Virus record (IMG/VR): IMGVR_UViG_3300045996_002337
Location: 62,001-126,000 of that record
Length of the DNA stretch: 64,000 bases
Strand: one strand, 5' to 3'
Each line of letters starts with the position of its first letter. Position 1 is the first letter of the stretch. Positions 1 through 59,714 of the stretch are shown one piece after another. The notes under the pieces are model-generated. The model ran no database searches, was not told the origin of the DNA, and saw nothing but the letters and a program-made list of their open reading frames with translations. The position numbers and the translations under genes were made by a program.

Positions 1-3000
1 TTGGTGTGGAAACAACCTACAGTGCCGATGGGTGTTGTCAGCACGACCCTTCCATTGACGATCACAGGTATCCAGAACGTTGTCAACTTCCTGTACGGAT
101 ATGCGGCCTACTTGACCGATCGCGGATGGGAATTCAATCAACCATCTGAACACAACATTGACGCTGAAACTGGTCGCACCCGCAACTTCCAATTGGAAAT
201 TGAAAAATTCGTGGATGCTTGCTACGTTGGTCTAGAAGTAGATCAAGGCCACGTTGTGAACCCTTTCATTGATAGGGCGTGGTTCAATCAAGAAACTGGC
301 CTGATGTCTGAGTTCATTGACACATCCCTCTTTGATGTCACAGGTCACCCTGGCGTCTTTGACGCCCTAGGCGTGAAGTACAAGAAAGATGATCTCGATG
401 TTGTTCGCACTAATGCGCAGTCGTCGTTTGGCGCAACCGGACCGATGTTCTCTGCTCATATTCAGGTAGACGACTTCGAGCACCTGTTCATCTTTAACAA
501 CTTCTCGCAGCCTTCGACAGCATCTGGTCTTCTGTACGATCCATTTTCGGGCGGGCGCGTGATGACCTACAAGTTCAATGGGCGCAAACAGGCCTCGACG
601 ACCATGCGACCAGAGTTTGGTGGTCACTTCCTGGTCGGAAACAAGGTTCACCAGAACTTGCAGGCGTCAACTGATAACGTTGCAAACTTCTACGATCCTA
701 ACCGCGCGTTTGAGAATGAAACCACATCGCGTCACGCCCTCGCTCTTCTTGGCTTCAATACCAAGCAGTACTTTGACGACCTCGACATCTCAAACAAGAC
801 GCAGTTCAATTTCTGGCGTGGCCTGATTCAGGCCAAGGGCACGAACATGTCTATCGCCGCCTACCTCAACAACAATCGTTTTGATGATGCGAAGATTGAT
901 GAGTATTGGGCCTACAAGGTGGCGGAGTACGGCGATGCCCGACAGCGCGAGTATCCTGAGCTTAAGCTTTCTGTCAACGACGCCCTGACACAGTTCACAC
1001 AGCTTCAATTTGACGCAGCAGGTGGCGAGGGGCCAGGTGAACTAAGCGGCTTCTCGCAGATTAGTCGTTTCGATGAAAGTCGGTGGTTCAGCATCGATGA
1101 TATGGATCAAGACACTTACTTCAAAGCTGAGGTCGTAGGCACCTTCAAGAAGCAGGCGGTAGAGGGTGAGATCATCACGTTGCCGTTTATTGCTGACAAC
1201 CTTGAGCCAACAAGTGTAACTGGAGCTGCGGGATCTTTCGAGATCATTAACGCCACCACTATCATGGTGACAACGCTCGGCTCTGTCCAGGCTGACGGCA
1301 CGAACTTCAGCGTGATTGGTTATGGTCCTGCACGGCCACGTTTCAACCCAGTCAAACTATTCAACTACGTTGAAGATGAGTTGGTTGCTGAAATTTCGCT
1401 ATGGCATCCCGCTGCTGGCATCCATACCCCAGCAGCGATCGAAAGCATCAATGTAATCTCAGATCAAAACCCAGCGAAGTACAACTACTCGACGCTGTCT
1501 CTAAACAACAGCTCGTACGATCCGCTCCGGGCCTGGGGTGAGAATGAAGTTGGCCGCGTTTGGTTTGATACCCGTAACCTTGACTACCTCCCGTACTATG
1601 ATGAAAATGTCTTCTTGACACTTGATGAGAGATTGAGCCGTTGGGGCACTCTCGCCGATTACGCAAGCGTTGATGTATACGAATGGGTTCAATCTTCAGT
1701 GCCGCCGTCAGAGTACAACGTGCTGGCACAAGAGCAGGCTGGAGATGCGGATTTAGATCCAAACACAAAGGCAGCAGGTGAAGTCGCCAACCGCCAAACT
1801 TACGTACGTAACCGCCTGTGGTCTATTCGCCCTGTCGCATGGTCTTACTCGCCAGTTCCTGTTGACGTAGATTGGGGAGCAACACCGCCGTTTGTTGGCG
1901 GTTCTACTGATGCGCAACTTTCATTCAGCGATGGTTTGGCGTCACTTGACCGTGGCACATTTGCAGAATATGGCATCTTTGCGGGCATGCGTATTGGCGC
2001 ATGGAACAATGATGAAGTAAACCCTGCTCCATTGAGCGAATATCTTATCGAAGATGAATTCACCAAGGTCCTCAAGACAATTGATGGCGCTGCTTGGACA
2101 ACGCAGCCATCGACAACCGCTCTTGAGTGCTCAGTCGATGTGATTGCGTCTGGATACTCCAGCATCTCAGGGCAGCTTCTTTTCTCAGCAGCGCCAGTTG
2201 AAACGATTGGCAATGCTACAGATGAAAATGGCCTAGTAATTTCTTGGGGTGTGGATGTTCCAATGCGAGTCACTGAAGTTGGAAGTGGTGACAGCGAGTA
2301 TGTGATTGTTAGCTCAGGCGTTGGTGCAAATTCCTCAGCCTTGCTCTATGGCGCGACAGTTTCAGTTATTGCAGGAGAGAAGATCACCGTTGAGCTTCCG
2401 GCGTTTGGCCTAACTGTCATTGTTACAATCGCAGAGGCAGGCGAGTTCCCAATTGATTCGATTCGTAACGCAATCGTTAGCGCCCTGGGTGACAAACTCG
2501 TCGTGCGAGATGCTGTTGTAATCTCACCAATCGTGCCAGGCGCTGTTGTTGACATGTCAAACGATCTGCAGGACAATGATTTCCGTTTTGGATGGAGAGC
2601 TTGGTCTGTACCATCTCAAGCGCAGCTTGCTGCTGATGCTGTGCAGCCGTATTCCTCGTGGAAACCGTATGTTGGTGAATTCATGCCAATCGTGGGTAAC
2701 ATGACGCAGGTGCAGGACGCGGTTCAGTACGCCAGAGAGCCATTGTCCCTTAACGATGGCACGATCATCGAGCGTTACAAAACGACCTGGTCGAATTGGC
2801 GGGTTCTTGAAAATGAACGCAAGTCGGTCACCGCCGTAGGTCTTGAAAATGGCGAGCCTGTTCTTTTCACTTTTGACGAGAACATCGACCCTGCGCGGGT
2901 ATCTGTGTATGTGAATGGTATTGCCCAGCTAAAGGCTGCCTATACAATCACTGGTAAGACGGTCACGGTGCATTCTGTTCGCCGAGCTTCCACTGCCACT

Positions 3001-3948
3001 GTCATCATTCGTAAGTACGAGCCGTCTCTGGCCGAACTTGCCTTTGATCCAGATGTCGCTGATAACTTGGCCTTCCAGCAGCAATTTAAGCAAGACTACG
3101 AGTACGTTGCACAGCCGGTGCGTGACAACGAAGGTTCATTGACACAAATGCGTTATTTCTTCTGGGTCAAGAATAAGACGACGACAGCCATTGGCAAGAA
3201 GCTTTCAGTTCAAGCGATCACGCAGGAACTGCAAGAAGGTCCATCAAACTACCTGACCTTCCAGCATTTCTTAGAATCTAATTGGGCCCAGCCGAAGAGA
3301 TACGACGCAATTACGATTTCAGGTCTGTCGTATGTCGTCACGAAAGATGACACGTTTAAGCTGCGTTTCACCCGCGATTTTACCCTACGTGATGAACCAG
3401 AAGAACTGAACCTGAAGAACACTCACACTGAATGGGCGTTGATTCGTGCTGGTCAGAAGACACGTATTCCTGAAACACTTTGGCAAAAATTGACAGATAG
3501 CGTAGCTGGAGAAGACGCAGCTGGAAATGCCGTGCCAGCGGTTCGTCGTGTCCTGTATGACGAACGCAATGGAACGCGCACCCAGTTCGGCTTTAACCGC
3601 GAGCAAACCCTGGCCCCGTCCAATTTGCTCAGGTCGTCAATTGCTCATACCATCGTAAATACTACCTTGGTTGATTCGAGTGGTTCTGTCCCGGTTCCAG
3701 ATTACATTTCGTTCTTGGATTTGGATGATGCAGATGCGTGGTTTGCAGATGCAACGACAGCTCGTAAAACGATGACAGATATTTGGAATTCTGCGAAGGT
3801 TGAACAGGTAAACGAGATCTTTTTTGCTGCGCTGAATGATATTCTAGCAAGCAACTATCAGCTCTCAGATATCTTCAAGACGTCGCGCCTTTCAGCCTAC
3901 TCAATTAAAGTGGTGCGAGCCGCTGCAGTACCACAAACTTATGAGTGA
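1..3948 (+). CDS. Large virion structural protein (baseplate/tail-associated), 5' truncated by window edge
   Basis: Uninterrupted 1315-codon ORF from base 1, in the structural cluster; no enzyme motif seen. Confidence 0.6.
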   Translation: MVWKQPTVPMGVVSTTLPLTITGIQNVVNFLYGYAAYLTDRGWEFNQPSEHNIDAETGRTRNFQLEIEKFVDACYVGLEVDQGHVVNPFIDRAWFNQETGLMSEFIDTSLFDVTGHPGVFDALGVKYKKDDLDVVRTNAQSSFGATGPMFSAHIQVDDFEHLFIFNNFSQPSTASGLLYDPFSGGRVMTYKFNGRKQASTTMRPEFGGHFLVGNKVHQNLQASTDNVANFYDPNRAFENETTSRHALALLGFNTKQYFDDLDISNKTQFNFWRGLIQAKGTNMSIAAYLNNNRFDDAKIDEYWAYKVAEYGDARQREYPELKLSVNDALTQFTQLQFDAAGGEGPGELSGFSQISRFDESRWFSIDDMDQDTYFKAEVVGTFKKQAVEGEIITLPFIADNLEPTSVTGAAGSFEIINATTIMVTTLGSVQADGTNFSVIGYGPARPRFNPVKLFNYVEDELVAEISLWHPAAGIHTPAAIESINVISDQNPAKYNYSTLSLNNSSYDPLRAWGENEVGRVWFDTRNLDYLPYYDENVFLTLDERLSRWGTLADYASVDVYEWVQSSVPPSEYNVLAQEQAGDADLDPNTKAAGEVANRQTYVRNRLWSIRPVAWSYSPVPVDVDWGATPPFVGGSTDAQLSFSDGLASLDRGTFAEYGIFAGMRIGAWNNDEVNPAPLSEYLIEDEFTKVLKTIDGAAWTTQPSTTALECSVDVIASGYSSISGQLLFSAAPVETIGNATDENGLVISWGVDVPMRVTEVGSGDSEYVIVSSGVGANSSALLYGATVSVIAGEKITVELPAFGLTVIVTIAEAGEFPIDSIRNAIVSALGDKLVVRDAVVISPIVPGAVVDMSNDLQDNDFRFGWRAWSVPSQAQLAADAVQPYSSWKPYVGEFMPIVGNMTQVQDAVQYAREPLSLNDGTIIERYKTTWSNWRVLENERKSVTAVGLENGEPVLFTFDENIDPARVSVYVNGIAQLKAAYTITGKTVTVHSVRRASTATVIIRKYEPSLAELAFDPDVADNLAFQQQFKQDYEYVAQPVRDNEGSLTQMRYFFWVKNKTTTAIGKKLSVQAITQELQEGPSNYLTFQHFLESNWAQPKRYDAITISGLSYVVTKDDTFKLRFTRDFTLRDEPEELNLKNTHTEWALIRAGQKTRIPETLWQKLTDSVAGEDAAGNAVPAVRRVLYDERNGTRTQFGFNREQTLAPSNLLRSSIAHTIVNTTLVDSSGSVPVPDYISFLDLDDADAWFADATTARKTMTDIWNSAKVEQVNEIFFAALNDILASNYQLSDIFKTSRLSAYSIKVVRAAAVPQTYE

Positions 3949-23224: not shown

Positions 23225-23895
23225 CTTTTTGCTTTGTTCATTCGCGTTAGACGCTTGCTTAATGATTTCTTGCGTGTGCGCTTCGACTTCAAAACGCGGA
23301 TGATCTTCTTCCGACGTCCTGCAATAGAGAGCTTCATGCGTGTCGATGCTTTAGCGCGCGGCTTGTAGGCCGTCTTGATGTTAGCAACGACACGACCTTT
23401 ACGGTATCCCGACGTTACTCGGAATCCCTTCTTGATCTTTTTACCAGAACGACGAAATGCAGCCTTCACTGCCTCATCAACTAGTTCAATTGTAACATCA
23501 TCGGTTGGCGGTTCATCCTCGGCTTCAGGTTCGCCCTCCTCAATGCCGAGCTCCTTCAGTGTATCCATGTCAAGAACTACACCTGAAGGATACACATCAT
23601 CGTTGACACGCGTTAGGACAATTGAATCTTCCGTAGGTTCAACCAGAACGACCTTGCCGTTCTGGTCCTTAATCTCCCCAGGTTCGCCGTCCTCAGCGAT
23701 GTCGAAGAACTTCTGAAGCTGAACGTTGTCAATCTTCAATTGGAAGCCATCGCAAGAGAGGATCAAACCATGATTGGCGAGGTGACCAACGGACCACCCA
23801 GCAGGAACCGTAGGTCCAACTTCAGGAGAGGCTTGCGCCTCTCCGTCTGTTGAAGGCTCTTCAATCTCTTTTGAGACTTCCTTTAGAAGATTCAC
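23221..23895 (-). CDS. Prohead core protein-like (acidic N-part, very basic C-tail)
   Basis: Likely GTG start 23895 overlapping the upstream stop (MNLLKEV); basic tail 'RRSGKKIKKGFRVTSGYRKGRVVA...' like T4-group prohead core proteins. Confidence 0.5.
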   Translation of the reverse strand: MNLLKEVSKEIEEPSTDGEAQASPEVGPTVPAGWSVGHLANHGLILSCDGFQLKIDNVQLQKFFDIAEDGEPGEIKDQNGKVVLVEPTEDSIVLTRVNDDVYPSGVVLDMDTLKELGIEEGEPEAEDEPPTDDVTIELVDEAVKAAFRRSGKKIKKGFRVTSGYRKGRVVANIKTAYKPRAKASTRMKLSIAGRRKKIIRVLKSKRTRKKSLSKRLTRMNKAKR

Positions 23896-26819
23896 AGCGA
23901 AGCTTTCACCAGTGCGTTGTACTCGGACTTGGTAACGCGATGCTTCTTGAACCATGCCTTGTTTTCTTCCCAGTCGCCACCAGAATCATAGCCATCCTTT
24001 TCAAGCTTAGCGAGATAGGTGTCCATGCCAGCGGCCGAACCGCCGAGGAACAACGCGCGAACTGCGCGAGCTGAACCATTAGTTGACTGTTGAATCTTGG
24101 ACAGCACTGCTTCAACATCTACCTTAGCTTCATTCAGATCTTCGTTAGCTTGTTCAGGCTGGCCACCACGTGGAGCAGTGTTCTTAGAAAGAACGTCTTG
24201 CAGTCGACCGATGAGGGTCAGTACCTGCGCGCGGTTACGAAGCTCAGCCTTGCGTGTGCGCAGCGACTGCACGATCTGTGTACGGCGACGTTGGAGTACA
24301 TCGTCTGGAATGCCCAGAGCGGAGACGAGACCAACAACTGCTTGCGCGAAGTCGTCGTTACCAACGTCAAGGGCTTCTTTGAGTGGGGGTGCTTTGTTAA
24401 GCTTCACGACCTTATGATCGTCCAGGCCTTCACCGTCGATTTCGTCTTGGGCATCTTGCTTGGTATCAAATGGACCATCGTAGTAGTCGCCATCGTATGT
24501 CACGATGTAATAACCTGGGCCCTCACGATTTTCTTTGAGGCCAGAGAGCTTCTTGCCTTCCGAAACCGGCTTCATCGCGTCAGACGACTTAACACCTAGA
24601 CGGGTTGCCAGCAGACGCAGCGCACGTTCAAGATTTGAATCCTGCTCGATGAGCTCAGCGGTGCGATACACGCCAGTACCAACTGCAGATGGACCACCAG
24701 TGGTGATCAGTGATTCTGGAAGACCCAGTTCTACGAGAACGGTTTCAAACAGCTTCTGAATGAACGAACCACGCTTCTGGCGAGGAGCTTCAGTGAGCTT
24801 GGCTTCACTAACTTTGGCCGTCTTGATCCAACCAGTCGACCCATCCCATTCGCCGACGCCCTTTGTGGAGCCACGCTTGAACGGCTTGTCACCGACCAAA
24901 GCATTGGCGATGTCCTCGTCGCCATCAAGCCAGTGGCCAGGGTGGGCCTTCTTTAGAGCGCGCTTCCAGGCTGCGAACGACGTGTATTCCTGGTTGCCAT
25001 CTGCATCTTTAGCTTCATTTGTTTGCTCAGCTGGTGGTGCGTAGCCCTTGGCATTTGCAAGGCCCTCATACAGCGACATGAATGCGCGACGGACAGAGAC
25101 CTTCTTGCGGAGCATATCAGCAGCACTGGAGATTGTTGACTCAACGTCTTCAGTGTTTAGGTAACGACCTGGAACGCCCGCCATTACGTGGAAAGCGATC
25201 AAGCGCTTTGCGAATGGGAGCTTGAGCTTAGCGGTCAGGGCGCGTGCTTGGCTGTCAAGCGGAATGTTGAAGCCGTCCTTGACGCCATCACGATCTTCGC
25301 CAGGAGCCTCTTGCAGAACGCGGGCGAGGAATTTGGAACCAATTGTTGTCATGTTATTCTCCTGTTCAATATCCTCTTTTTTGAGGCGGGTTAGTTTTTT
25401 GCCGTGCTTTTCCTTGGTGAGCTTCTTATCACCACGCATTACGTACTCTTCGCCTTCATTGTCCTCAATGTAGACTACATTGTTTGGACCCTCTACCATC
25501 GCGGCGATGTGAAGACCCTTACCTGTCATTGCCTTGATGGCAGCAGCTTGAGAAGGAGAGTCTGCTTCTTGCTCCTTGGCCTCATTTGTGCGAGACGTTG
25601 GGACGATGTCGAATGTCAAGTCCTTGTACTTTGCCTGATCACCCATCTCTTCGATCCACTGTTCGCAATTATCGTATGAACCTTCATAGTAGATGCGACC
25701 CTTTGTCTCATCTGCTTTGACGCGATAGGTGCCCTTGGCCTCGTTCATGCGTTTTTTGGCGCGATCAGTTAGCAGATCAGGATTTTGATTGATCAAATCC
25801 GCCATGTCATCCTCATCCAGCGACGCAAAGCCAAACTCGCCATATTCATCTTCAGCCATCTTATTTGCTCGCTTAATGTCGATGTAATCTTCCATGTCAT
25901 CTTCATCAAGCCCCGAGAATCCGAATTCGCCGTGATGCTCTTTTGCGATGTAGTTCAGCTGCGCCCACGGCGTTTTGCCCTTAGCATTGAGCGCCTCCTT
26001 CACGGGCTCATCCTCATCTTCAACTGGCTCTGCTGGTGCCGCCTTCTTTTTCTTTTTCTTCTTAGGCTTGCCGTCTTCGTCAGTCTCGTCCTCTTCACTT
26101 GACCCTTCGTCAGAGGCTTCCTCATCTCCAGCTTCATCTTCTGCGGCTGCAGCGGCAATTTCGTCCTCTACTTCAGCTTGAGGATCGGCTTTCTTTTTAG
26201 GAGCCTCTTCCTCCTCGGAGTCATCACTAGCAACAACGTCAAAGTTGTCATCAGCAAAATCATCGCCGATTTCAAGATCTTCGGTGTCATCGAGTTCAAG
26301 GTCAGCGTCAGGATCGGCATCGCCCTCCTCGTCTTCAGAACGAGGCCATACGACGTCAACGATGTCAAACTCAGTCGTAAGGCGGTTGATGGCTTCCTCG
26401 ATGTCATCCTCGAGGCCGAGCATGTTCTTCATGGCCTCTTCAAACTTGTCGGCTTGCTCGGCGTTGACATAGACCTTAACGATCTGGCCGTCATCGGTTT
26501 CAAGCCCGAACGGGACGGTGTCGATCTCGTCATTGAGTTCCTCAGCGCGCTCGATATAGTTTGCTACATCGGAACCACTCACTACACCGTTCGAGTTAAT
26601 GGTGTTGCGCATCAAGCTGAAGGCAATGTCAGTGCTCGCGCCTGCCTTATCGGCGACGTCGTTGGTTCCAGCGTCAGTGGCATCCGATTTCTTGAGAAGC
26701 TGCTGCGTGTTGCTCAGCTCCTTAAGAAGGCTTGACTGAGACTGAGATTCCTGTTGAACGGGTGCGACAGTAGGGGTCTCAGCGATTGATTGTGTGTTGA
26801 TGGTCTTTAGAAGACTCAT
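23892..26819 (-). CDS. Large acidic probable head-internal polyprotein
   Basis: 975 aa; repeated hydrophobic-x-E-A/G junctions, acidic tract, internal repeats, internal SD+ATG at 25352. Confidence 0.55.
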   Translation of the reverse strand: MSLLKTINTQSIAETPTVAPVQQESQSQSSLLKELSNTQQLLKKSDATDAGTNDVADKAGASTDIAFSLMRNTINSNGVVSGSDVANYIERAEELNDEIDTVPFGLETDDGQIVKVYVNAEQADKFEEAMKNMLGLEDDIEEAINRLTTEFDIVDVVWPRSEDEEGDADPDADLELDDTEDLEIGDDFADDNFDVVASDDSEEEEAPKKKADPQAEVEDEIAAAAAEDEAGDEEASDEGSSEEDETDEDGKPKKKKKKKAAPAEPVEDEDEPVKEALNAKGKTPWAQLNYIAKEHHGEFGFSGLDEDDMEDYIDIKRANKMAEDEYGEFGFASLDEDDMADLINQNPDLLTDRAKKRMNEAKGTYRVKADETKGRIYYEGSYDNCEQWIEEMGDQAKYKDLTFDIVPTSRTNEAKEQEADSPSQAAAIKAMTGKGLHIAAMVEGPNNVVYIEDNEGEEYVMRGDKKLTKEKHGKKLTRLKKEDIEQENNMTTIGSKFLARVLQEAPGEDRDGVKDGFNIPLDSQARALTAKLKLPFAKRLIAFHVMAGVPGRYLNTEDVESTISSAADMLRKKVSVRRAFMSLYEGLANAKGYAPPAEQTNEAKDADGNQEYTSFAAWKRALKKAHPGHWLDGDEDIANALVGDKPFKRGSTKGVGEWDGSTGWIKTAKVSEAKLTEAPRQKRGSFIQKLFETVLVELGLPESLITTGGPSAVGTGVYRTAELIEQDSNLERALRLLATRLGVKSSDAMKPVSEGKKLSGLKENREGPGYYIVTYDGDYYDGPFDTKQDAQDEIDGEGLDDHKVVKLNKAPPLKEALDVGNDDFAQAVVGLVSALGIPDDVLQRRRTQIVQSLRTRKAELRNRAQVLTLIGRLQDVLSKNTAPRGGQPEQANEDLNEAKVDVEAVLSKIQQSTNGSARAVRALFLGGSAAGMDTYLAKLEKDGYDSGGDWEENKAWFKKHRVTKSEYNALVKASL

Positions 26820-26828
26820 GTTAGTCCT

Positions 26829-29129
26829 TTATACGGTGCTGTCGGTTGGCTTTGGAAACTTAGCCTTCTTGACATCAGGGTTGCGTTTGCGTTTCACAAC
26901 CTTGCGCGCCTTGTTAGGCATGGCGGGTGTGTTTGAGGCGGTGTCAGCGCTTTTTGTCGCAACCTCTAGTGAAGATCCTTGATTTTGCGGCGTCGAATCA
27001 CCATCGTCTTCAACCAGCGAGTTTACTTCAGCGAGCAGTTTCATTTCCTGAACCATTTGATCATTTTCTCCGTTCGCATTCAACAGAAGCTCTTCTTGAA
27101 TCGCCTTCAATCGAATGAACAACGGTGAAGTTGGGATGAATTGCTGCACGTAGTAGTACAGCTTTGCAATCGTTTTAACCTGCTTATCATGCGAAAGGGC
27201 CTCAAAATCGAACACCCCGTCAAGCAGGGTATTTATACGGTCGACATTGAGTCCCTCGAACTGCTGCAGAAGCTTAAGCGTTTTCTTGTGGTCTGACCAA
27301 TCAATTGGGACATCCTTGCCAAAGCTCAGGTCCATGTGTAAGTATCGGGCGGCGGCAGCAGGCGCACGTCGCGCCACCTTGTAGATCTGCTGAGAGTTTT
27401 TGTTACCAATGAGCTTCTTAACAGCCGGCTGAGATGCTCTCCAGACTGGATAACCCCAAAAATTGAGGGGAGACATTTCCTTGCTCCAACTTGTGAGCTT
27501 GTAATTTGTCTTGTCCTTTAGCATGCGAAGGCCCTTGGCGTCCTTCGTTGCATAGATGATTACCGACATCATTACGGTGGCAAGGTAGATGTTAAGGATA
27601 GTCCAGGCATCCTTGCCAGAGTACCGCGCTTTGTCCGTGTCGTACTTTGATTCGAACAGAAGACCTTCAGCAACCGGCTCAGAATCACCGACGGTGTGAA
27701 CAGCTTTGGCATGGTGCCCGTACAAAACCGCAATCACTTGTGCAACGGTTTTTGTCTTTTTGATCTTGTCAAACAGCTCAAGAATGTTACGGCGAGATTC
27801 AGCAAATGCTAGAAGGGTACGCTTCTCAATTTCGGGGGTGATACCAATCACCCTACCATTCTTTAACTTCAGGCGAAATTCATCCTTGTGTTCCTTGAAG
27901 TCCTCTAGGAGGGTCTTCAGGTCCATGGCTGCGCGCTGAACGAGTGCGAGGATCTTACGTTTGGCGCCAAGAAAATCATCAATTTCAAGCTGCGCTGAAA
28001 AGGCCTTGACCGTATCAACGGGAGTTGCTCCCTTAACGGCTGCAAACGCCCGCTTCGCAGTACCTCCGCGAGATAGCTCCGCGTTGCCCAGAAGATCTGC
28101 GATGCTGATCTTCATGTTGCCCAAGATTCCGCCCCGCGCTTCAAGTGGTGCATTTGGGTCCAGTGTTTTAACAACACCAGAGATTTGATTTCGAATTGCG
28201 TGATTGAAGGAATTGATCGTCGTGAAGTTGTCCTTGTCAACTAGCTTGATCAGCTCACCATTTGTTGGATCGCGTAGAACGACACCTTCAATTCCCACAT
28301 CTTCGTCTGAAGTCAAGTCACTATCTGACAGCGCAGGTTTAATCTTGCTGACGTAATTGTCGAGGAGTTCTTTTTTGACGGGCAGCTTGAAATCCGTCAT
28401 GATCTTAGCGGTAATCTCTGCCTTCTTGTCCTTGGCCTGCGGCCGCACGTCGACTTTAATAGAGCCGAGCGACGTGAAAAGCAGATCACCATTCGTCAGC
28501 TCAACACCTTCAACACCTGCTGGCTCATTCAAAAACTTTTCAAGTGCATCGAGGTGAGAGGTGAGGTTGATGTCCTTCAGCTTAGAAGGATCAACGCGTT
28601 GGGCACCAGTGAACTGGAATGTAACTTCCGTTGGGTGAATGTCGAGATTCTCACCATCGGTTGTAACAACAATGTTAGCCTGAACCTTAACAGAGGTTCC
28701 ACCCAGGGCTGTAGAAAGCTGGTCAGCGATTACGTCAGGTGTTCCATTAACACCACGCAGAAAGGCGATGTAGGACTTCCCCTCTGCTCCGTATGTGACG
28801 GCATTAGGCTGGCGCCCGTAGAGCACCTCAGCCTCAACCATTTGCCCTGGTTGCATGATTCGATTGATGTCTTCAATTCGTGCTTCCATGGCAGCGTGAG
28901 CCGAGCGAAAGCCGTTGTACGCACCAAAGTTTGGGTACTCGGCTTCAGCATAGAAGCGTTTGGCCTGAGCCCGCTTTCCTTCACGAGAGGTGAAGAACTT
29001 GCCATCTTCATCTCGTCCTAGCCAGAGATTTGCGCCATCAAGTTTTTCACTGGCGTGAAAGGAGGCAATGTTTCGAACTGCCTTGATGAAAGCTGGTAAA
29101 GCGAGGTCTTCTAGGTGCTGAATCGACAT
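26829..29129 (-). CDS. Ligase-like nucleotidyltransferase (DUF6267-like N-domain) fused to an unknown C-domain
   Basis: 'HLED', motif I 'SEKLDG', 'EAEVL', 'IEGVVL', 'IKLVDK'. Confidence 0.6.
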   Translation of the reverse strand: MSIQHLEDLALPAFIKAVRNIASFHASEKLDGANLWLGRDEDGKFFTSREGKRAQAKRFYAEAEYPNFGAYNGFRSAHAAMEARIEDINRIMQPGQMVEAEVLYGRQPNAVTYGAEGKSYIAFLRGVNGTPDVIADQLSTALGGTSVKVQANIVVTTDGENLDIHPTEVTFQFTGAQRVDPSKLKDINLTSHLDALEKFLNEPAGVEGVELTNGDLLFTSLGSIKVDVRPQAKDKKAEITAKIMTDFKLPVKKELLDNYVSKIKPALSDSDLTSDEDVGIEGVVLRDPTNGELIKLVDKDNFTTINSFNHAIRNQISGVVKTLDPNAPLEARGGILGNMKISIADLLGNAELSRGGTAKRAFAAVKGATPVDTVKAFSAQLEIDDFLGAKRKILALVQRAAMDLKTLLEDFKEHKDEFRLKLKNGRVIGITPEIEKRTLLAFAESRRNILELFDKIKKTKTVAQVIAVLYGHHAKAVHTVGDSEPVAEGLLFESKYDTDKARYSGKDAWTILNIYLATVMMSVIIYATKDAKGLRMLKDKTNYKLTSWSKEMSPLNFWGYPVWRASQPAVKKLIGNKNSQQIYKVARRAPAAAARYLHMDLSFGKDVPIDWSDHKKTLKLLQQFEGLNVDRINTLLDGVFDFEALSHDKQVKTIAKLYYYVQQFIPTSPLFIRLKAIQEELLLNANGENDQMVQEMKLLAEVNSLVEDDGDSTPQNQGSSLEVATKSADTASNTPAMPNKARKVVKRKRNPDVKKAKFPKPTDSTV

Positions 29130-35506: not shown

Positions 35507-35633
35507 TTTTATCTCCTAAGTGGCTTGGGAAACGTTACACGTTTTGCGCACGCGAGGTGCAACCCGTTGGGTTAAGATAGAGATTGCTCTCTAATCAAAA
35601 CTTATTTATAGGAGAATGGAGGTCATCCGGTGG

Positions 35634-47528: not shown

Positions 47529-47536
47529 TATAAATA
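47529..47536 (+). promoter_or_regulatory. T4-type late promoter (perfect TATAAATA)
   Basis: Upstream of the isolated + strand gene 47568. Confidence 0.75.
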
Positions 47537-47567: not shown

Positions 47568-48329
47568 ATGACAGTATCCTTCAAACAGTTCACCTCCTTC
47601 CTCGCTGCCGTATCAGATGGGGATCACACTGACCAGCAGCTTGATGAAATCTGGGACAAGATTCTCGGCAAAAAGAAAGAAGAGCAGGACGAGAAGGAAC
47701 AGGGCAGCAAGTCCAAGGTCCTGACTCTGAAGGACAAAATTGCCAAGGACAAGGAGAAGGCCGAACAGCGTAAGAAGGAGCTGCAGGCCCAACGTGACAA
47801 GGCCTTCCTTGATGCTAAGGACAGAGCAGAAGGCCGCAAGAAAACGCCATCAAGTCGGTACGATCGTGATGACTACGCAATCCACCGCCAAGTACGTGAA
47901 GGCAAGGAGTCCTTCACCGACGAAGGTCACTGGAAAGAAGCCGCGCAATCTGCTGGCTTCAAAGTCAAGAAGCTCTCAGGCAACTTGATGGACGGCGATC
48001 AAACCTGGGGCGCCTTTGATGGCGACAAGAAGGTTGGTGAATTCACCGAACAAGAAGAAGGTCGCGGTGGCTGGCTCATGACGAGCTTGAAGGAAGCGAA
48101 AAACATTGGCTTCTTTCAGATGTCAGATGCTTCCAAGGTAGAGAAGATGGACCTCGAGAAGGCCAAGGAATACCTAAAAGCTCAGGTAAACAAGACCGCT
48201 GCCAAGGCAGATCCAAGCAATGTGCGCAAGGCCATTGCTATGATTGACTCCGCAAAGGATGTCAAGAAACTTATGTTCGGCGTAGCGAACTTTATGATGT
48301 CCGCCGACGGCAACAAAGTTATCCGTTAA
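47568..48329 (+). CDS. Putative internal head (poly)protein
   Basis: Start MTVSFKQF (T4 targeting-leader-like), highly charged, junctions LDE, VRE-G, LKE-A. Confidence 0.55.
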   Translation: MTVSFKQFTSFLAAVSDGDHTDQQLDEIWDKILGKKKEEQDEKEQGSKSKVLTLKDKIAKDKEKAEQRKKELQAQRDKAFLDAKDRAEGRKKTPSSRYDRDDYAIHRQVREGKESFTDEGHWKEAAQSAGFKVKKLSGNLMDGDQTWGAFDGDKKVGEFTEQEEGRGGWLMTSLKEAKNIGFFQMSDASKVEKMDLEKAKEYLKAQVNKTAAKADPSNVRKAIAMIDSAKDVKKLMFGVANFMMSADGNKVIR

Positions 48330-48510: not shown

Positions 48511-49299
48511 TCATGTGCGCTTGCGTTTCTTCTGCTTCTTCAAGGGCTTCTTGATGGTGCAGGAAGGCGCTTGAAAATCTGAATCACCCAGCTTCCTGCG
48601 TAGTTCAGCAAGATCGCACCAACGAGTTCTGACAGTCGAAGAGCCAAGAATGACAATCGTGACAAGTCGATCTTTGATCTTCAGAACGGTAACGACGCAG
48701 CCACCTGCCTGATTAATGAATCCGGTTTTCGTCAGCAGAAAATCCCAAGTCGGTTTCCCTGTCAGCGGGTTTGTGTTCTTTCGAACGTGATTGCCGACAT
48801 AAGCCATCGGTTGAACAGACATCAGGGCCGCGTCTGAGCCTACCATTTTCTGTGCCAACTGGGCTATTGACCTGGCAGTGGACACGTTCTTAGGGTTCAA
48901 TCCAGAGCCTTCTAGAATTACCGTGTCAGCTGGCAATGGAACCTCAGGTACTCGGCTGAGGGCCAGCGCAGCCACATTATCTGAACGAACCATTGCGAGG
49001 GAAAGTAGATCGCGCCGTGAATAGGAATGACCCGCGATCAGGGGACTGCTTCGTGATTCCCCCTTTCGAACGTCCTCAGCTGTAACGATGATGTGTTCAT
49101 CGAGAGGAAGTCCTGCGTTGCGTTCCGCTATGAACAGCTTCGTGATGGACGCCATGGGGCGTCGCACGTCTGGGGCGTGCTCAAGAAGCACGTTACCTTC
49201 TTCGTCCAGCGCAATGTAGGACTTTGCCGTTGTGGCGCCTGCGAGAATTGGAAAGCAAAGGAGGACGGGCGCGAGGAATTTTAAAGCAAACGATTGCAT
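48511..49299 (-). CDS. D-alanyl-D-alanine endo/carboxypeptidase (peptidase S11, PBP7-like)
   Basis: Signal peptide, 'ASITK', 'SDN', 'KTG'. Confidence 0.9.
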   Translation of the reverse strand: MQSFALKFLAPVLLCFPILAGATTAKSYIALDEEGNVLLEHAPDVRRPMASITKLFIAERNAGLPLDEHIIVTAEDVRKGESRSSPLIAGHSYSRRDLLSLAMVRSDNVAALALSRVPEVPLPADTVILEGSGLNPKNVSTARSIAQLAQKMVGSDAALMSVQPMAYVGNHVRKNTNPLTGKPTWDFLLTKTGFINQAGGCVVTVLKIKDRLVTIVILGSSTVRTRWCDLAELRRKLGDSDFQAPSCTIKKPLKKQKKRKRT

Positions 49300-59628: not shown

Positions 59629-59714
59629 GCTACTGTCTCAGCAGGTTGTTATCGTTTATTTATAGTGCGCCGTTACATGGTTAAATAATAGCACACAACC
59701 AAACGGAGACCCAA

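What the first reader, a model, noticed from the sequence alone, without database searches (positions are those of the whole stretch)
23892..26819. 975-aa probable virion polyprotein: small domains strung between repeated x-x-E|A junctions
Seen: recurring junctions PVKE-AL, RMNE-AK, RTNE-AK, VLQE-AP, QTNE-AK, KVSE-AK, KLTE-AP, PVSE-GK, PLKE-AL and DLNE-AK delimit roughly 50-100 aa modules of different character. These are interleaved with three related helical segments (AGVPGRYL, LGLPESLI, LGIPDDVL) and a duplicated 'GEFGF..LDEDDM.D.I'. Known: T4 gp21 and phiKZ gp175 head proteases cleave after Glu in short motifs. Inference: a scaffold that has accreted mini-domains, released as separate proteins during head maturation, i.e. 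phage polyprotein delivery of multiple effectors.
Basis: partly seen in the sequence, partly recalled or inferred. Interest (0 to 1): 0.8.

Follow-up and report, generated by a model that had tools for sequence, protein, structure and literature searches.

The report
Modular jumbo-phage head polyprotein candidate
A 975-residue protein of an uncultured T4-related jumbo phage is built from a conserved core plus swappable mini-domains, each joined by a short motif matching the cutting site of the T4-type head protease, so it is probably chopped into small proteins inside the capsid, though cleavage itself has not been shown.

Summary
The 975-aa ORF exists. All ten quoted junctions are present. 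The motif [LIVMT]-x-E-[AG]-[KPL] occurs 12 times against 0.9 expected, about 14-fold denser than in the other 64 window genes.

Fifty-five orthologues show a universal core: MSLLK leader, N-domain, acidic linker and three weakly related helical modules. Rare mini-domains are inserted between these. At the core junctions P1 Glu is 43/44, 50/51 and 56/56, P1' is mostly Ala, P3 is hydrophobic and P2 varies. These junctions fall in low-confidence AlphaFold linkers. Motif matches inside folds are not conserved.

The same modules occur in unrelated proteins, always preceded by Phi-x-E|A(K), sometimes directly after a short N-terminal leader.

Relatives encode a T4 gp21-type (Peptidase_S77) protease. 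The upstream gene's homologue is a reported virion protein of RsoM2USA, and it is fused to this family in about 20 lineages.

Most likely this is a head-internal polyprotein cut by the prohead protease. Cleavage, virion location and any effector function remain inferred. The protease could not be checked in the window's own genome. I rate it a new variant of a known kind.

The parts
23892..26819 (-). Whole 975-aa ORF (stop codon included): candidate head-internal polyprotein
26778..26819 (-). aa 1-14, N-terminal leader MSLLKTINTQSIAE|T. MSLLK(D/E/T)(I/F) is conserved in nearly all 56 orthologues and stays N-terminal even when modules are inserted directly after it
26340..26582 (-). aa 80-160, conserved N-domain (beta-beta-alpha-alpha-beta). 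54% identical to RsoM2USA ORF437. Also found at residues ~560-770 of fusion proteins
25995..26339 (-). aa 161-275, acidic disordered linker (the 15-275 piece has net charge -58) with a K7 run. Ends at PVKE|AL
25740..25994 (-). aa 276-360, accessory module M1 (GEFGF..LDEDDM duplicated). Present in 3/56 orthologues. Found in other proteins behind Phi-x-E|AK. Ends at RMNE|AK
25581..25739 (-). aa 361-413, accessory module M2 (beta-beta-alpha-beta). Present in 1/56. Ends at RTNE|AK in a linker with pLDDT below 50
25308..25580 (-). aa 414-504, accessory module M3. Its C-terminal helix ends at VLQE|AP, a junction where P1 is Glu in 43/44 and P1' is Ala in 39/44 aligned orthologues
25014..25307 (-). 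aa 505-602, core helical module M4 (AGVPGRYL), present in 53/56. Ends at QTNE|AK
24804..25013 (-). aa 603-672, accessory module M5, present in 5/56. 42% identical to part of PA5oct virion protein EST35_0203. Ends at KVSE|AK
24789..24803 (-). aa 673-677, pentapeptide AKLTE between two adjacent sites. KLTE|AP is the conserved N-edge site of M6 (Glu 50/51, Ala 42/51)
24558..24788 (-). aa 678-754, core helical module M6 (LGLPESLI), present in 56/56. Ends at PVSE|GK
24375..24557 (-). aa 755-815, accessory module M7, present in 4/56. Starts with KKLSGLKE, a copy of the W(K/R)xLS(A/G)LxE peptide. Ends at PLKE|AL, where Glu is 56/56
24129..24374 (-). aa 816-897, core helical module M8 (LGIPDDVL), present in 43/56. 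Ends at DLNE|AK
23895..24128 (-). aa 898-975, accessory module M9, present in 2/56. Elsewhere it is a standalone 97-aa protein behind a LAGLP leader, or is fused to a head-module small protein
26829..29129 (-). Upstream partner gene, 766 aa, nucleotidyltransferase/ligase-like (KxDG). Homologue of RsoM2USA ORF438, a reported virion band. Fused to this family in about 20 lineages. Has a conserved PVAE|GLLFE|S site at residues 488/493

Best explanation
The gene encodes a head-internal (prohead-core) polyprotein of a T4-related jumbo phage.

Shown:
- It has a conserved core made of an MSLLK leader, an N-domain, an acidic linker and three paralogous helical modules.
- Lineage-specific 50-90-aa mini-domains are inserted between the core parts.
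- Every module edge carries a short motif: hydrophobic residue, any residue, Glu, then Ala/Gly/Ser. The motif sits in a disordered linker, is conserved across the family, and accompanies the same modules into unrelated proteins.

Inferred:
- The leader, and/or the LS(A/G)L- and LAG-type peptides, bring the protein into the assembling prohead, together with the adjacent ligase-like protein with which it is fused in many relatives.
- The phage's gp21-type (Peptidase_S77) prohead protease then cuts after each junction Glu. This would release pieces of about 5-11 kDa plus a 28-kDa acidic N-terminal piece.
- It is unknown whether the pieces stay in the head, leave it like T4 scaffold peptides, or enter the host with the DNA like T4 internal proteins.
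For: - Motif enrichment. In the 55 orthologues the strict motif occurs 124 times against 33 +/- 6 in shuffles.
- Core versus accessory architecture.
- Junction conservation: P1 Glu 43/44, 50/51 and 56/56, P1' mostly Ala, P3 hydrophobic, P2 variable. In-fold matches are not conserved (Glu 15/56 and 6/14). E815 is one of only four nearly invariant residues in the 86-sequence alignment.
- Structure: junctions 413, 672/677, 754, 815 and 897 lie in segments with pLDDT below 50, between modules with pLDDT 85-98.
- Edge test: 189 of 328 sites lie within +/-5 aa of module edges against 40.6 expected. Site number scales with length, rho = 0.65.
- Portability: M1, M5 and M9 in other proteins are always preceded by Phi-x-E|A(K) with unrelated upstream sequence, sometimes directly after a 6-13-aa N-terminal leader.
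- Protease: RsoM2USA has a gp21 homologue (40% identity) next to portal and MCP genes. PF03420 is abundant on jumbo contigs. One contig carries both orthologue P0006 and the Portal_T4/Peptidase_S77/Gp23 module.
- Calibration: T4 gp23's documented cut after residue 65 is FLTE|A (PMC9958956).
- Virion links: RsoM2USA ORF438 is among the ten main virion bands (PMC8504454), and the window's 766-aa gene is its homologue (E = 3e-94). About 20 natural fusions join the 438-like protein to this family. PA5oct gp203 (MS-detected) has a LAG leader plus VKE|S plus an M5 module. P0168 is a homologue of a head-module small protein followed by INE|AK and M9.
Against: - There is no direct evidence of cleavage or of virion location for this family. 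RsoM2USA ORF437 was not among the ten bands analysed.
- The gene lies in the replication-gene cluster, on that cluster's strand.
- The PA5oct homologue of the 438-like partner carries no MS note, although it sits among MS-confirmed virion genes.
- The protease could not be verified in the window's own genome because the contig's DNA was not retrievable.
- The predicted fragments are acidic to neutral, not clearly basic.
- Module edges were defined from this protein's own sites and the orthologues are related, so the statistics are inflated.
- The published masses of ORF438 and ORF257 are lower than predicted but fit no Glu-bounded fragment.
Confidence: 0.55

Rival explanations
1. It is an uncleaved modular protein. 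The Phi-x-E-A(K) peptides are linker conventions, helix-start signals or docking motifs for a partner, and the protein works intact, for example as a tether or hub in replication or early infection.
For: The gene sits among helicase, primase, polymerase and ligase genes. There is no proteomic evidence for this family. Part of the motif conservation can be inherited with homologous modules. At several sites in this protein P2 is N, S or T, residues that favour helix N-caps.
Against: Across orthologues P2 is highly variable (D, E, K, T, N, S, A, M, Q) while P1 Glu is nearly invariant, which is unlike an N-cap. The invariant residues lie in low-confidence linkers, not in the helices. The motif appears directly after short N-terminal leaders in small proteins, and some homologues begin almost exactly at the predicted cut, as expected for removable propeptides. 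The pattern matches the specificity of the protease family encoded by relatives.
Confidence: 0.2
2. It is a pure assembly (scaffold/core) protein like T4 gp22, gp67 and gp68. It is cut at many sites only so that the pieces can leave the prohead and make room for DNA. The accessory modules would then have no role in the host.
For: T4 gp22, gp67 and gp68 are degraded to small peptides by gp21 (PMC9958956). The long acidic tract resembles, in composition, the acidic tail of T4 gp67 printed. The core is conserved while the inserts are dispensable.
Against: The relatives' head modules already hold a separate 289-295-aa scaffold-like gene next to the MCP gene. The pieces are folded 5-11-kDa domains rather than short peptides. 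The accessory modules are kept as independent genes with their own leaders, which suggests they are selected for themselves.
Confidence: 0.15
3. It is a cytoplasmic polyprotein processed outside the capsid, by the same or another protease, to yield several small early or middle proteins.
For: The genomic position is among replication genes. No late-promoter evidence could be obtained.
Against: No suitable protease is nearby; the only peptidase-like neighbours are cell-wall enzymes, Peptidase_M23 and Peptidase_S11. gp21-type proteases are activated inside proheads (PMC9958956). There are links to virion proteins.
Confidence: 0.08

Closest known systems
T4 internal proteins IPI/IPII/IPIII and Alt, with the capsid-targeting sequence and gp21 cleavage
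   Same: A short N-terminal leader ends in hydrophobic-x-Glu. Relatives encode a gp21-type protease. The products are small and comparable in size to the predicted 5-11-kDa fragments. The cargo is variable and non-essential-looking (PMC9958956 and PMC5694885).
   Different: In T4 each internal protein is a separate gene with one cut. Here many modules are strung in one ORF with a cut site at every joint, on a conserved core. No sequence similarity to T4 internal proteins was found. Packaging and ejection have not been shown.
T4 prohead core proteins gp22, gp67 and gp68
   Same: They are cut at multiple Glu sites by the prohead protease. They are helical with acidic tracts (PMC9958956).
   Different: They are much smaller, sit in the head gene cluster, and are degraded to peptides. 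The relatives studied here have their own scaffold-like gene.
phiKZ and SPN3US inner-body or ejection proteins processed by gp175 and gp245
   Same: They are giant-phage head proteins with long regions cut at several Glu sites, and they are abundant ejected proteins (PMC10052503 and PMC5694885).
   Different: Their motif is (S/A/G)-x-E or A-x-E, which is not enriched here. Processing there removes N-terminal propeptides and leaves one mature protein, rather than releasing a string of domains.
Polyvalent proteins of phages and conjugative elements (Iyer et al. 2017, PMC5512222)
   Same: They are multidomain proteins proposed to be packaged, delivered with the DNA and split into separate units. 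Domain content is combinatorial.
   Different: Polyvalent proteins carry recognisable enzymatic domains and typically a built-in MPTase peptidase. Here no such domain is detectable, and cleavage would be in trans by the head protease at a repeated linear motif.
Phage P1 DarA/Hdf head proteins
   Same: They are head-internal and proteolytically processed (PMC5512222). DarA_N is the most frequent weak Pfam hit of the N-domain (8/30 members, best E = 0.0021).
   Different: The hit is below Pfam's threshold, and Foldseek against the PDB found nothing. It is treated as an unconfirmed lead.

Membership tests
Substrates of T4 gp21-type (Peptidase_S77) prohead protease | The phage encodes a Peptidase_S77 protease in a T4-type head module | tested here: inconclusive
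   Met in relatives: RsoM2USA ORF379 (40% identity to T4 gp21), and dsDNA_phage_37, which also carries orthologue P0006. Matching contig lengths link P0055 with P0382 and P0052 with P0364. The window's own contig could not be read outside the window.
Substrates of T4 gp21-type (Peptidase_S77) prohead protease | Cleavage motif hydrophobic-x-Glu followed by a small residue, in an accessible region | tested here: met
   Ten junction sites, enriched 13-fold, conserved, in low-pLDDT linkers. T4 gp23's known site FLTE|A fits the same pattern.
Substrates of T4 gp21-type (Peptidase_S77) prohead protease | The protein is present in proheads and is actually cleaved | not testable with these tools
   This needs proteomics or biochemistry. 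Only indirect links exist.
T4 internal-protein / CTS system | An N-terminal leader of about 10-20 aa that ends at a protease site and is conserved among cargo proteins | tested here: met
   MSLLK(D/E/T)(I/F) is conserved in nearly all 56 orthologues, with a first Phi-x-E at residues 6-14 in most. Similar leaders occur in 438-like fusions and small cargo-like proteins. The targeting function itself has not been tested.
T4 internal-protein / CTS system | Sequence homology to T4 IPI, IPII, IPIII or Alt | tested here: not met
   No Pfam or PHROG family matches the protein or any module. tblastn against phages hits only RsoM2USA and PA5oct-like phages.
Polyvalent proteins (PMC5512222) | Several distinct domains in one polypeptide with combinatorial architectures | tested here: met
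   About 11 modules with variable presence across 56 orthologues and other proteins.
Polyvalent proteins (PMC5512222) | Hallmark conflict domains and/or a built-in MPTase peptidase | tested here: not met
   No significant Pfam hit for any module. DarA_N is only sub-threshold and has no structural support.
Phage scaffolding protein (T4 gp22-like) | Encoded in the head module next to the MCP gene; the single main scaffold | tested here: not met
   Relatives have a separate 289-295-aa helical gene between the protease and MCP genes. This gene lies about 50-60 kb away, in the replication cluster.

The most novel reading that the evidence does not exclude
The mini-domains are exchangeable cargo cassettes. 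Each is a small folded domain that carries its own Phi-x-E|A(K) entry site. Jumbo phages shuffle them between standalone genes with leaders, mini-polyproteins such as the 203-aa P0179, the large core polyprotein, and fusions with a virion enzyme. After cleavage in the head the cassettes would be injected with the DNA as a lineage-specific set of host-takeover or anti-defence factors. This would be a fused, combinatorial counterpart of the hypervariable internal-protein locus of T-even phages.
Probability: 0.25. Interest if true: 0.85.

Novelty: new variant of a known kind. Interest (0 to 1): 0.62.

Why it matters
If the junctions are real protease sites, this family would show that T4-type head proteases process polyproteins with many products, and not only propeptides and scaffolds. 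It would also show that small domains spread between phage proteins as units carrying their own cleavage site.

That would give a simple sequence rule (leader, then hydrophobic-x-Glu|Ala-Lys) for predicting capsid-packaged proteins in uncultured jumbo phages. It would also give a catalogue of unknown 50-90-aa domains that are candidates for proteins injected with the DNA. The rule could be reused to load foreign proteins into capsids, as was done with the T4 targeting sequence. The idea can be tested now in the cultured relative RsoM2USA.

Tried and rejected
- **Nucleotide similarity:** no match to any deposited phage.
- **Family assignment:** no Pfam or PHROG family for the protein or any module, even at E <= 1.
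- **ESM Atlas:** only unnamed viral clusters.
- **Fold search:** the whole model and the N-domain model against the PDB gave nothing below E = 0.36. BFVD found only a 386-aa protein with 52% identity (presumably RsoM2USA ORF437) and one 468-aa phage protein.
- **DarA_N lead:** recurrent but sub-threshold and without structural support. Not adopted.
- **phiKZ-type motif (S/A/G)-x-E:** not enriched, so gp175-like specificity is rejected.
- **DNA-level repeat or microhomology as the source of the motif:** rejected, because the codons differ synonymously.
- **T4 late-promoter test:** TATAAATA is enriched in the window (4 against 0.37), and one copy lies 410 nt upstream of the gene. It is absent from the head genes of both relatives, so the test is uninformative.
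- **Published RsoM2USA masses:** ORF438 is listed at 51.69 kDa against 62.43 calculated, and ORF257 at 17.57 against 19.65. No Glu-bounded fragment reproduces these values. Inconclusive.
- **XacN1 synteny:** searching near its DNA polymerase did not locate the homologue.
- **Walking to the head module of the window's own contig:** failed because the DNA is not retrievable.
- That row was left out and the job was rerun without it.
Full report
**1. The observation**

The ORF at 23892-26819 on the minus strand encodes 975 aa. All ten quoted junctions, the three helical segments and the duplicated GEFGF..LDEDDM peptide are present at the stated places.

The motif is not a composition effect. [LIVMT]-x-E-[AG]-[KPL] occurs 12 times against 0.91 expected, and none of 20,000 shuffles reaches 12. 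NEAK occurs 4 times against 0.04. The phiKZ-type motif [SAG]-x-E is not enriched, at 15 against 23.8. Motif density is 1.23 per 100 aa, against 0.089 per 100 aa in the other 64 plausible genes of the window. The junction codons differ synonymously, so the constraint acts on the protein and not on a DNA repeat.

**2. Genome and context**

The window comes from a 349,660-bp contig. It contains:
- a plus-strand cluster of virion, tail-fibre-like and lysin genes at 1-19.6 kb;
- a minus-strand cluster with a B-family DNA polymerase, DnaB-type helicase, primase, exonuclease, RnlA-type ligase and PhoH.

The 975-aa gene lies in the second cluster. By DNA polymerase the nearest cultured phage is Ralstonia jumbo phage RsoM2USA (47% identity), followed by XacN1-like and Rak2-like T4-related jumbo phages. 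No deposited phage matches at the nucleotide level.

**3. Family and architecture**

A word-indexed search found 55 orthologues of 540-950 aa, several on contigs of 350-380 kb. An exhaustive search found 533 representative clusters.

Mapping the modules of the window protein onto the orthologues gives two classes:
- **Universal core:** N-terminal region, N-domain (aa 80-160), acidic linker, and helical modules M4 (53/56), M6 (56/56) and M8 (43/56).
- **Rare inserts:** M1 (3/56), M2 (1/56), M5 (5/56), M7 (4/56) and M9 (2/56).

M4, M6 and M8 are weakly related in register around an LG(V/L/I)P turn, with hhalign E = 4e-5, 9e-5 and 7e-4.

**4. The junction motif across the family**

The sequences flanking each core module in all orthologues show a hydrophobic-x-Glu|Ala site at the N-edge of M4, M6 and M8, and a PVxE| site at the C-edge of M6. 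Column counts from the family alignment are:

| Site | P3 hydrophobic | P2 | P1 = Glu | P1' = Ala |
|---|---|---|---|---|
| 504 | 50/56 | variable | 43/44 | 39/44 |
| 677 | 47/49 | variable | 50/51 | 42/51 |
| 815 | 52/56 | variable | 56/56 | 42/55 |

E815 is one of only four nearly invariant residues in the 86-sequence alignment. The two motif matches that lie inside folded elements act as an internal control: at 585 Glu is kept in 15/56, and at 443 in 6/14.

In the AlphaFold2 model (mean pLDDT 69.9) folded modules with pLDDT 85-98 are separated by segments below 50 at 407-418, 669-679, 753-756, 813-818 and 886-899. These are exactly where junctions 413, 672/677, 754, 815 and 897 lie.

Across 50 orthologues, 189 of 328 sites fall within 5 residues of a module edge, against 40.6 expected. 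Site number rises with length (rho = 0.65). The strict motif occurs 124 times against 33 +/- 6 in shuffles. These figures are inflated by relatedness, and by the fact that the edges were defined from this protein's own sites.

**5. Evidence that does not depend on orthology**

When M1, M5 and M9 occur in other proteins, their N-edge again carries hydrophobic-x-Glu|Ala-Lys, although the upstream sequence is unrelated. In three proteins the module follows a 6-13-residue N-terminal leader directly.

Small proteins show the same pattern in miniature:
- P0179 (203 aa) is a leader followed by three accessory modules joined by such sites.
- P0161 is a LAGLP-type leader, a site, and M9.
- P0168 is a homologue of a 54-aa ORF lying between the protease and scaffold genes of a relative (63% identity, E = 8e-18), followed by a site and M9.

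**6. Leaders and a second short motif**

Nearly all orthologues begin with MSLLK(D/E/T)(I/F). This stays at the extreme N-terminus even where whole modules are inserted directly behind it.

A second peptide, W(K/R)xLS(A/G)LxE, itself bracketed by Glu sites, occurs 23 times in the family against 5.3 +/- 2.1 expected. The window protein has one copy at 755-763.

A related (R/K)(L/I)AG(L/V/I) leader ending in a Glu site opens small proteins of the relatives' head modules. It also opens PA5oct gp203.

**7. The protease**

Local tblastn with T4 head proteins against the complete RsoM2USA genome finds a portal (gp20-like), a gp21 homologue (40% identity over 184 aa), a gp23-like MCP and a gp17-like terminase. 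[quoted passage not shown]

This protease family (PF03420) has thousands of relatives, many on contigs of 320-500 kb. One 143,631-bp contig carries both orthologue P0006, in the same syntenic slot (primase, helicase, 768-aa gene, orthologue), and a Portal_T4/Peptidase_S77/scaffold-like/Gp23 module.

All characterised proteases of this kind cut after Glu (PMC5694885). T4 gp23's documented removal of 65 residues (PMC9958956) falls at FLTE|A in the T4 sequence. That T4 gp21 prefers Leu or Ile at P3 is from my own knowledge of the T4 literature.

I could not check the window's own genome, because its contig DNA is not retrievable outside the window.

**8. Links to the virion**

- The gene immediately upstream (766 aa, KxDG nucleotidyltransferase/ligase-like) is homologous to RsoM2USA ORF438 (36% identity over 499 aa, E = 3e-94). 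That paper lists ORF438 among the ten most abundant virion bands identified by LC-MS/MS (PMC8504454).
- About 20 representative proteins are natural fusions of this 438-like protein with the N-domain and core modules of the 975-aa family. They have a conserved Glu site at the end of the 438-like part. Many also have a 9-12-residue leader ending Phi-L-x-E|GI(T/S). Homologues that lack the leader start almost exactly at that point.
- PA5oct gp203, detected in virions by MS, contains an M5-like module (42% identity) behind a LAG-type leader.

Against this:
- RsoM2USA ORF437 itself was not among the bands analysed.
- The PA5oct homologue of the 438-like protein has no MS note, although it sits among MS-confirmed virion genes.

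**9. What the modules do**

This is unknown. No Pfam or PHROG family matches any module. Foldseek finds no solved structure. The Atlas gives only unnamed viral clusters. A recurrent sub-threshold DarA_N signal in the N-domain has no structural support.

The predicted fragments are 5-11 kDa and acidic to neutral, plus a 28-kDa acidic N-terminal piece.

**10. Verdict**

The most likely reading (about 0.55) is a head-internal polyprotein cut by the T4-type prohead protease at every module joint.

Shown:
- the modular architecture;
- the motif's conservation, position and portability;
- the presence of the matching protease in relatives;
- the physical and evolutionary link to a reported virion protein.

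Inferred:
- packaging into the prohead;
- cleavage at the junctions;
- the fate of the pieces.

It works like T4's internal-protein system and like the multiply cut head proteins of giant phages. It is not a sequence member of either, and it lacks the defining domains of polyvalent proteins. I rate it a new variant of a known kind, and it can be tested directly in RsoM2USA.

Noticed in passing
window 26829-29129 (-): The 766-aa gene has a KxDG nucleotidyltransferase/ligase-like N-terminus (weak RNA_ligase hit). It is the homologue of RsoM2USA ORF438, a reported abundant virion protein. An enzyme of this kind packaged in a capsid would be unusual. Its C-terminal ~280 aa lies beyond the conserved PVAE|GLLFE|S site and is absent from RsoM2USA ORF438.
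   Followed up: partly
window 47568-48329 (+): This 253-aa gene lies on the opposite strand to its neighbours, with a TATAAATA 32 nt upstream. It contains KKLSGN and TSLKE|AKN, the same pattern as the polyprotein junctions. It may be a second cargo-type protein. It has no Pfam hit.
   Followed up: partly
window 27230-27237, 35603-35610, 59657-59664 (-) and 47529-47536 (+): TATAAATA, the T4 late-promoter consensus, occurs 4 times against 0.37 expected. Three copies lie 29-97 nt upstream of small-gene starts. The motif is absent from the head genes of the two relatives examined, so its meaning here is unclear.
   Followed up: partly
window 1-3948 (+): This is the C-terminal 1,315 aa of a 2,873-aa gene (gene table) matching a PHROG 'virion structural protein' family. 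It is followed by a 1,366-aa gene with no family at all.
   Followed up: no
window 48511-49299 (-): A 262-aa protein with a clear D-Ala-D-Ala carboxypeptidase domain (Peptidase_S11, E = 1e-21), inside the replication-gene cluster of a phage.
   Followed up: no
RsoM2USA record 188,617-211,225 (L007 and L008): A long array of several dozen consecutive genes of about 190-200 aa each (ORF301-337), apparently a tandemly expanded paralogue family. All are annotated as hypothetical.
   Followed up: no
RsoM2USA ORF438 and ORF257 (PMC8504454): The paper's masses for these two virion bands (51.69 and 17.57 kDa) are below the masses I compute from the deposited CDS (62.43 and 19.65 kDa). The other seven agree to within about 0.2 kDa. 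ORF257 begins with a leader-like MFDMLKGLINAPITE|D.
   Followed up: partly
P0024 and P0318 (family orthologue and S77 protease): Both carry a source name 'hypothetical protein [Acinetobacter sp.]'. This is a possible hint to the host of some members of this phage lineage, or a binning artefact.
   Followed up: no
L011 11520-12407 and RsoM2USA 260369-261238: The scaffold-like proteins next to the MCP gene start with MDEIL(K/Q)KLL.SELLSE. In dsDNA_phage_37 the protein ends with EMRRLAGIK, which resembles the LAG-type leaders of small head-module proteins. This may be a shared capsid-binding peptide.
   Followed up: partly
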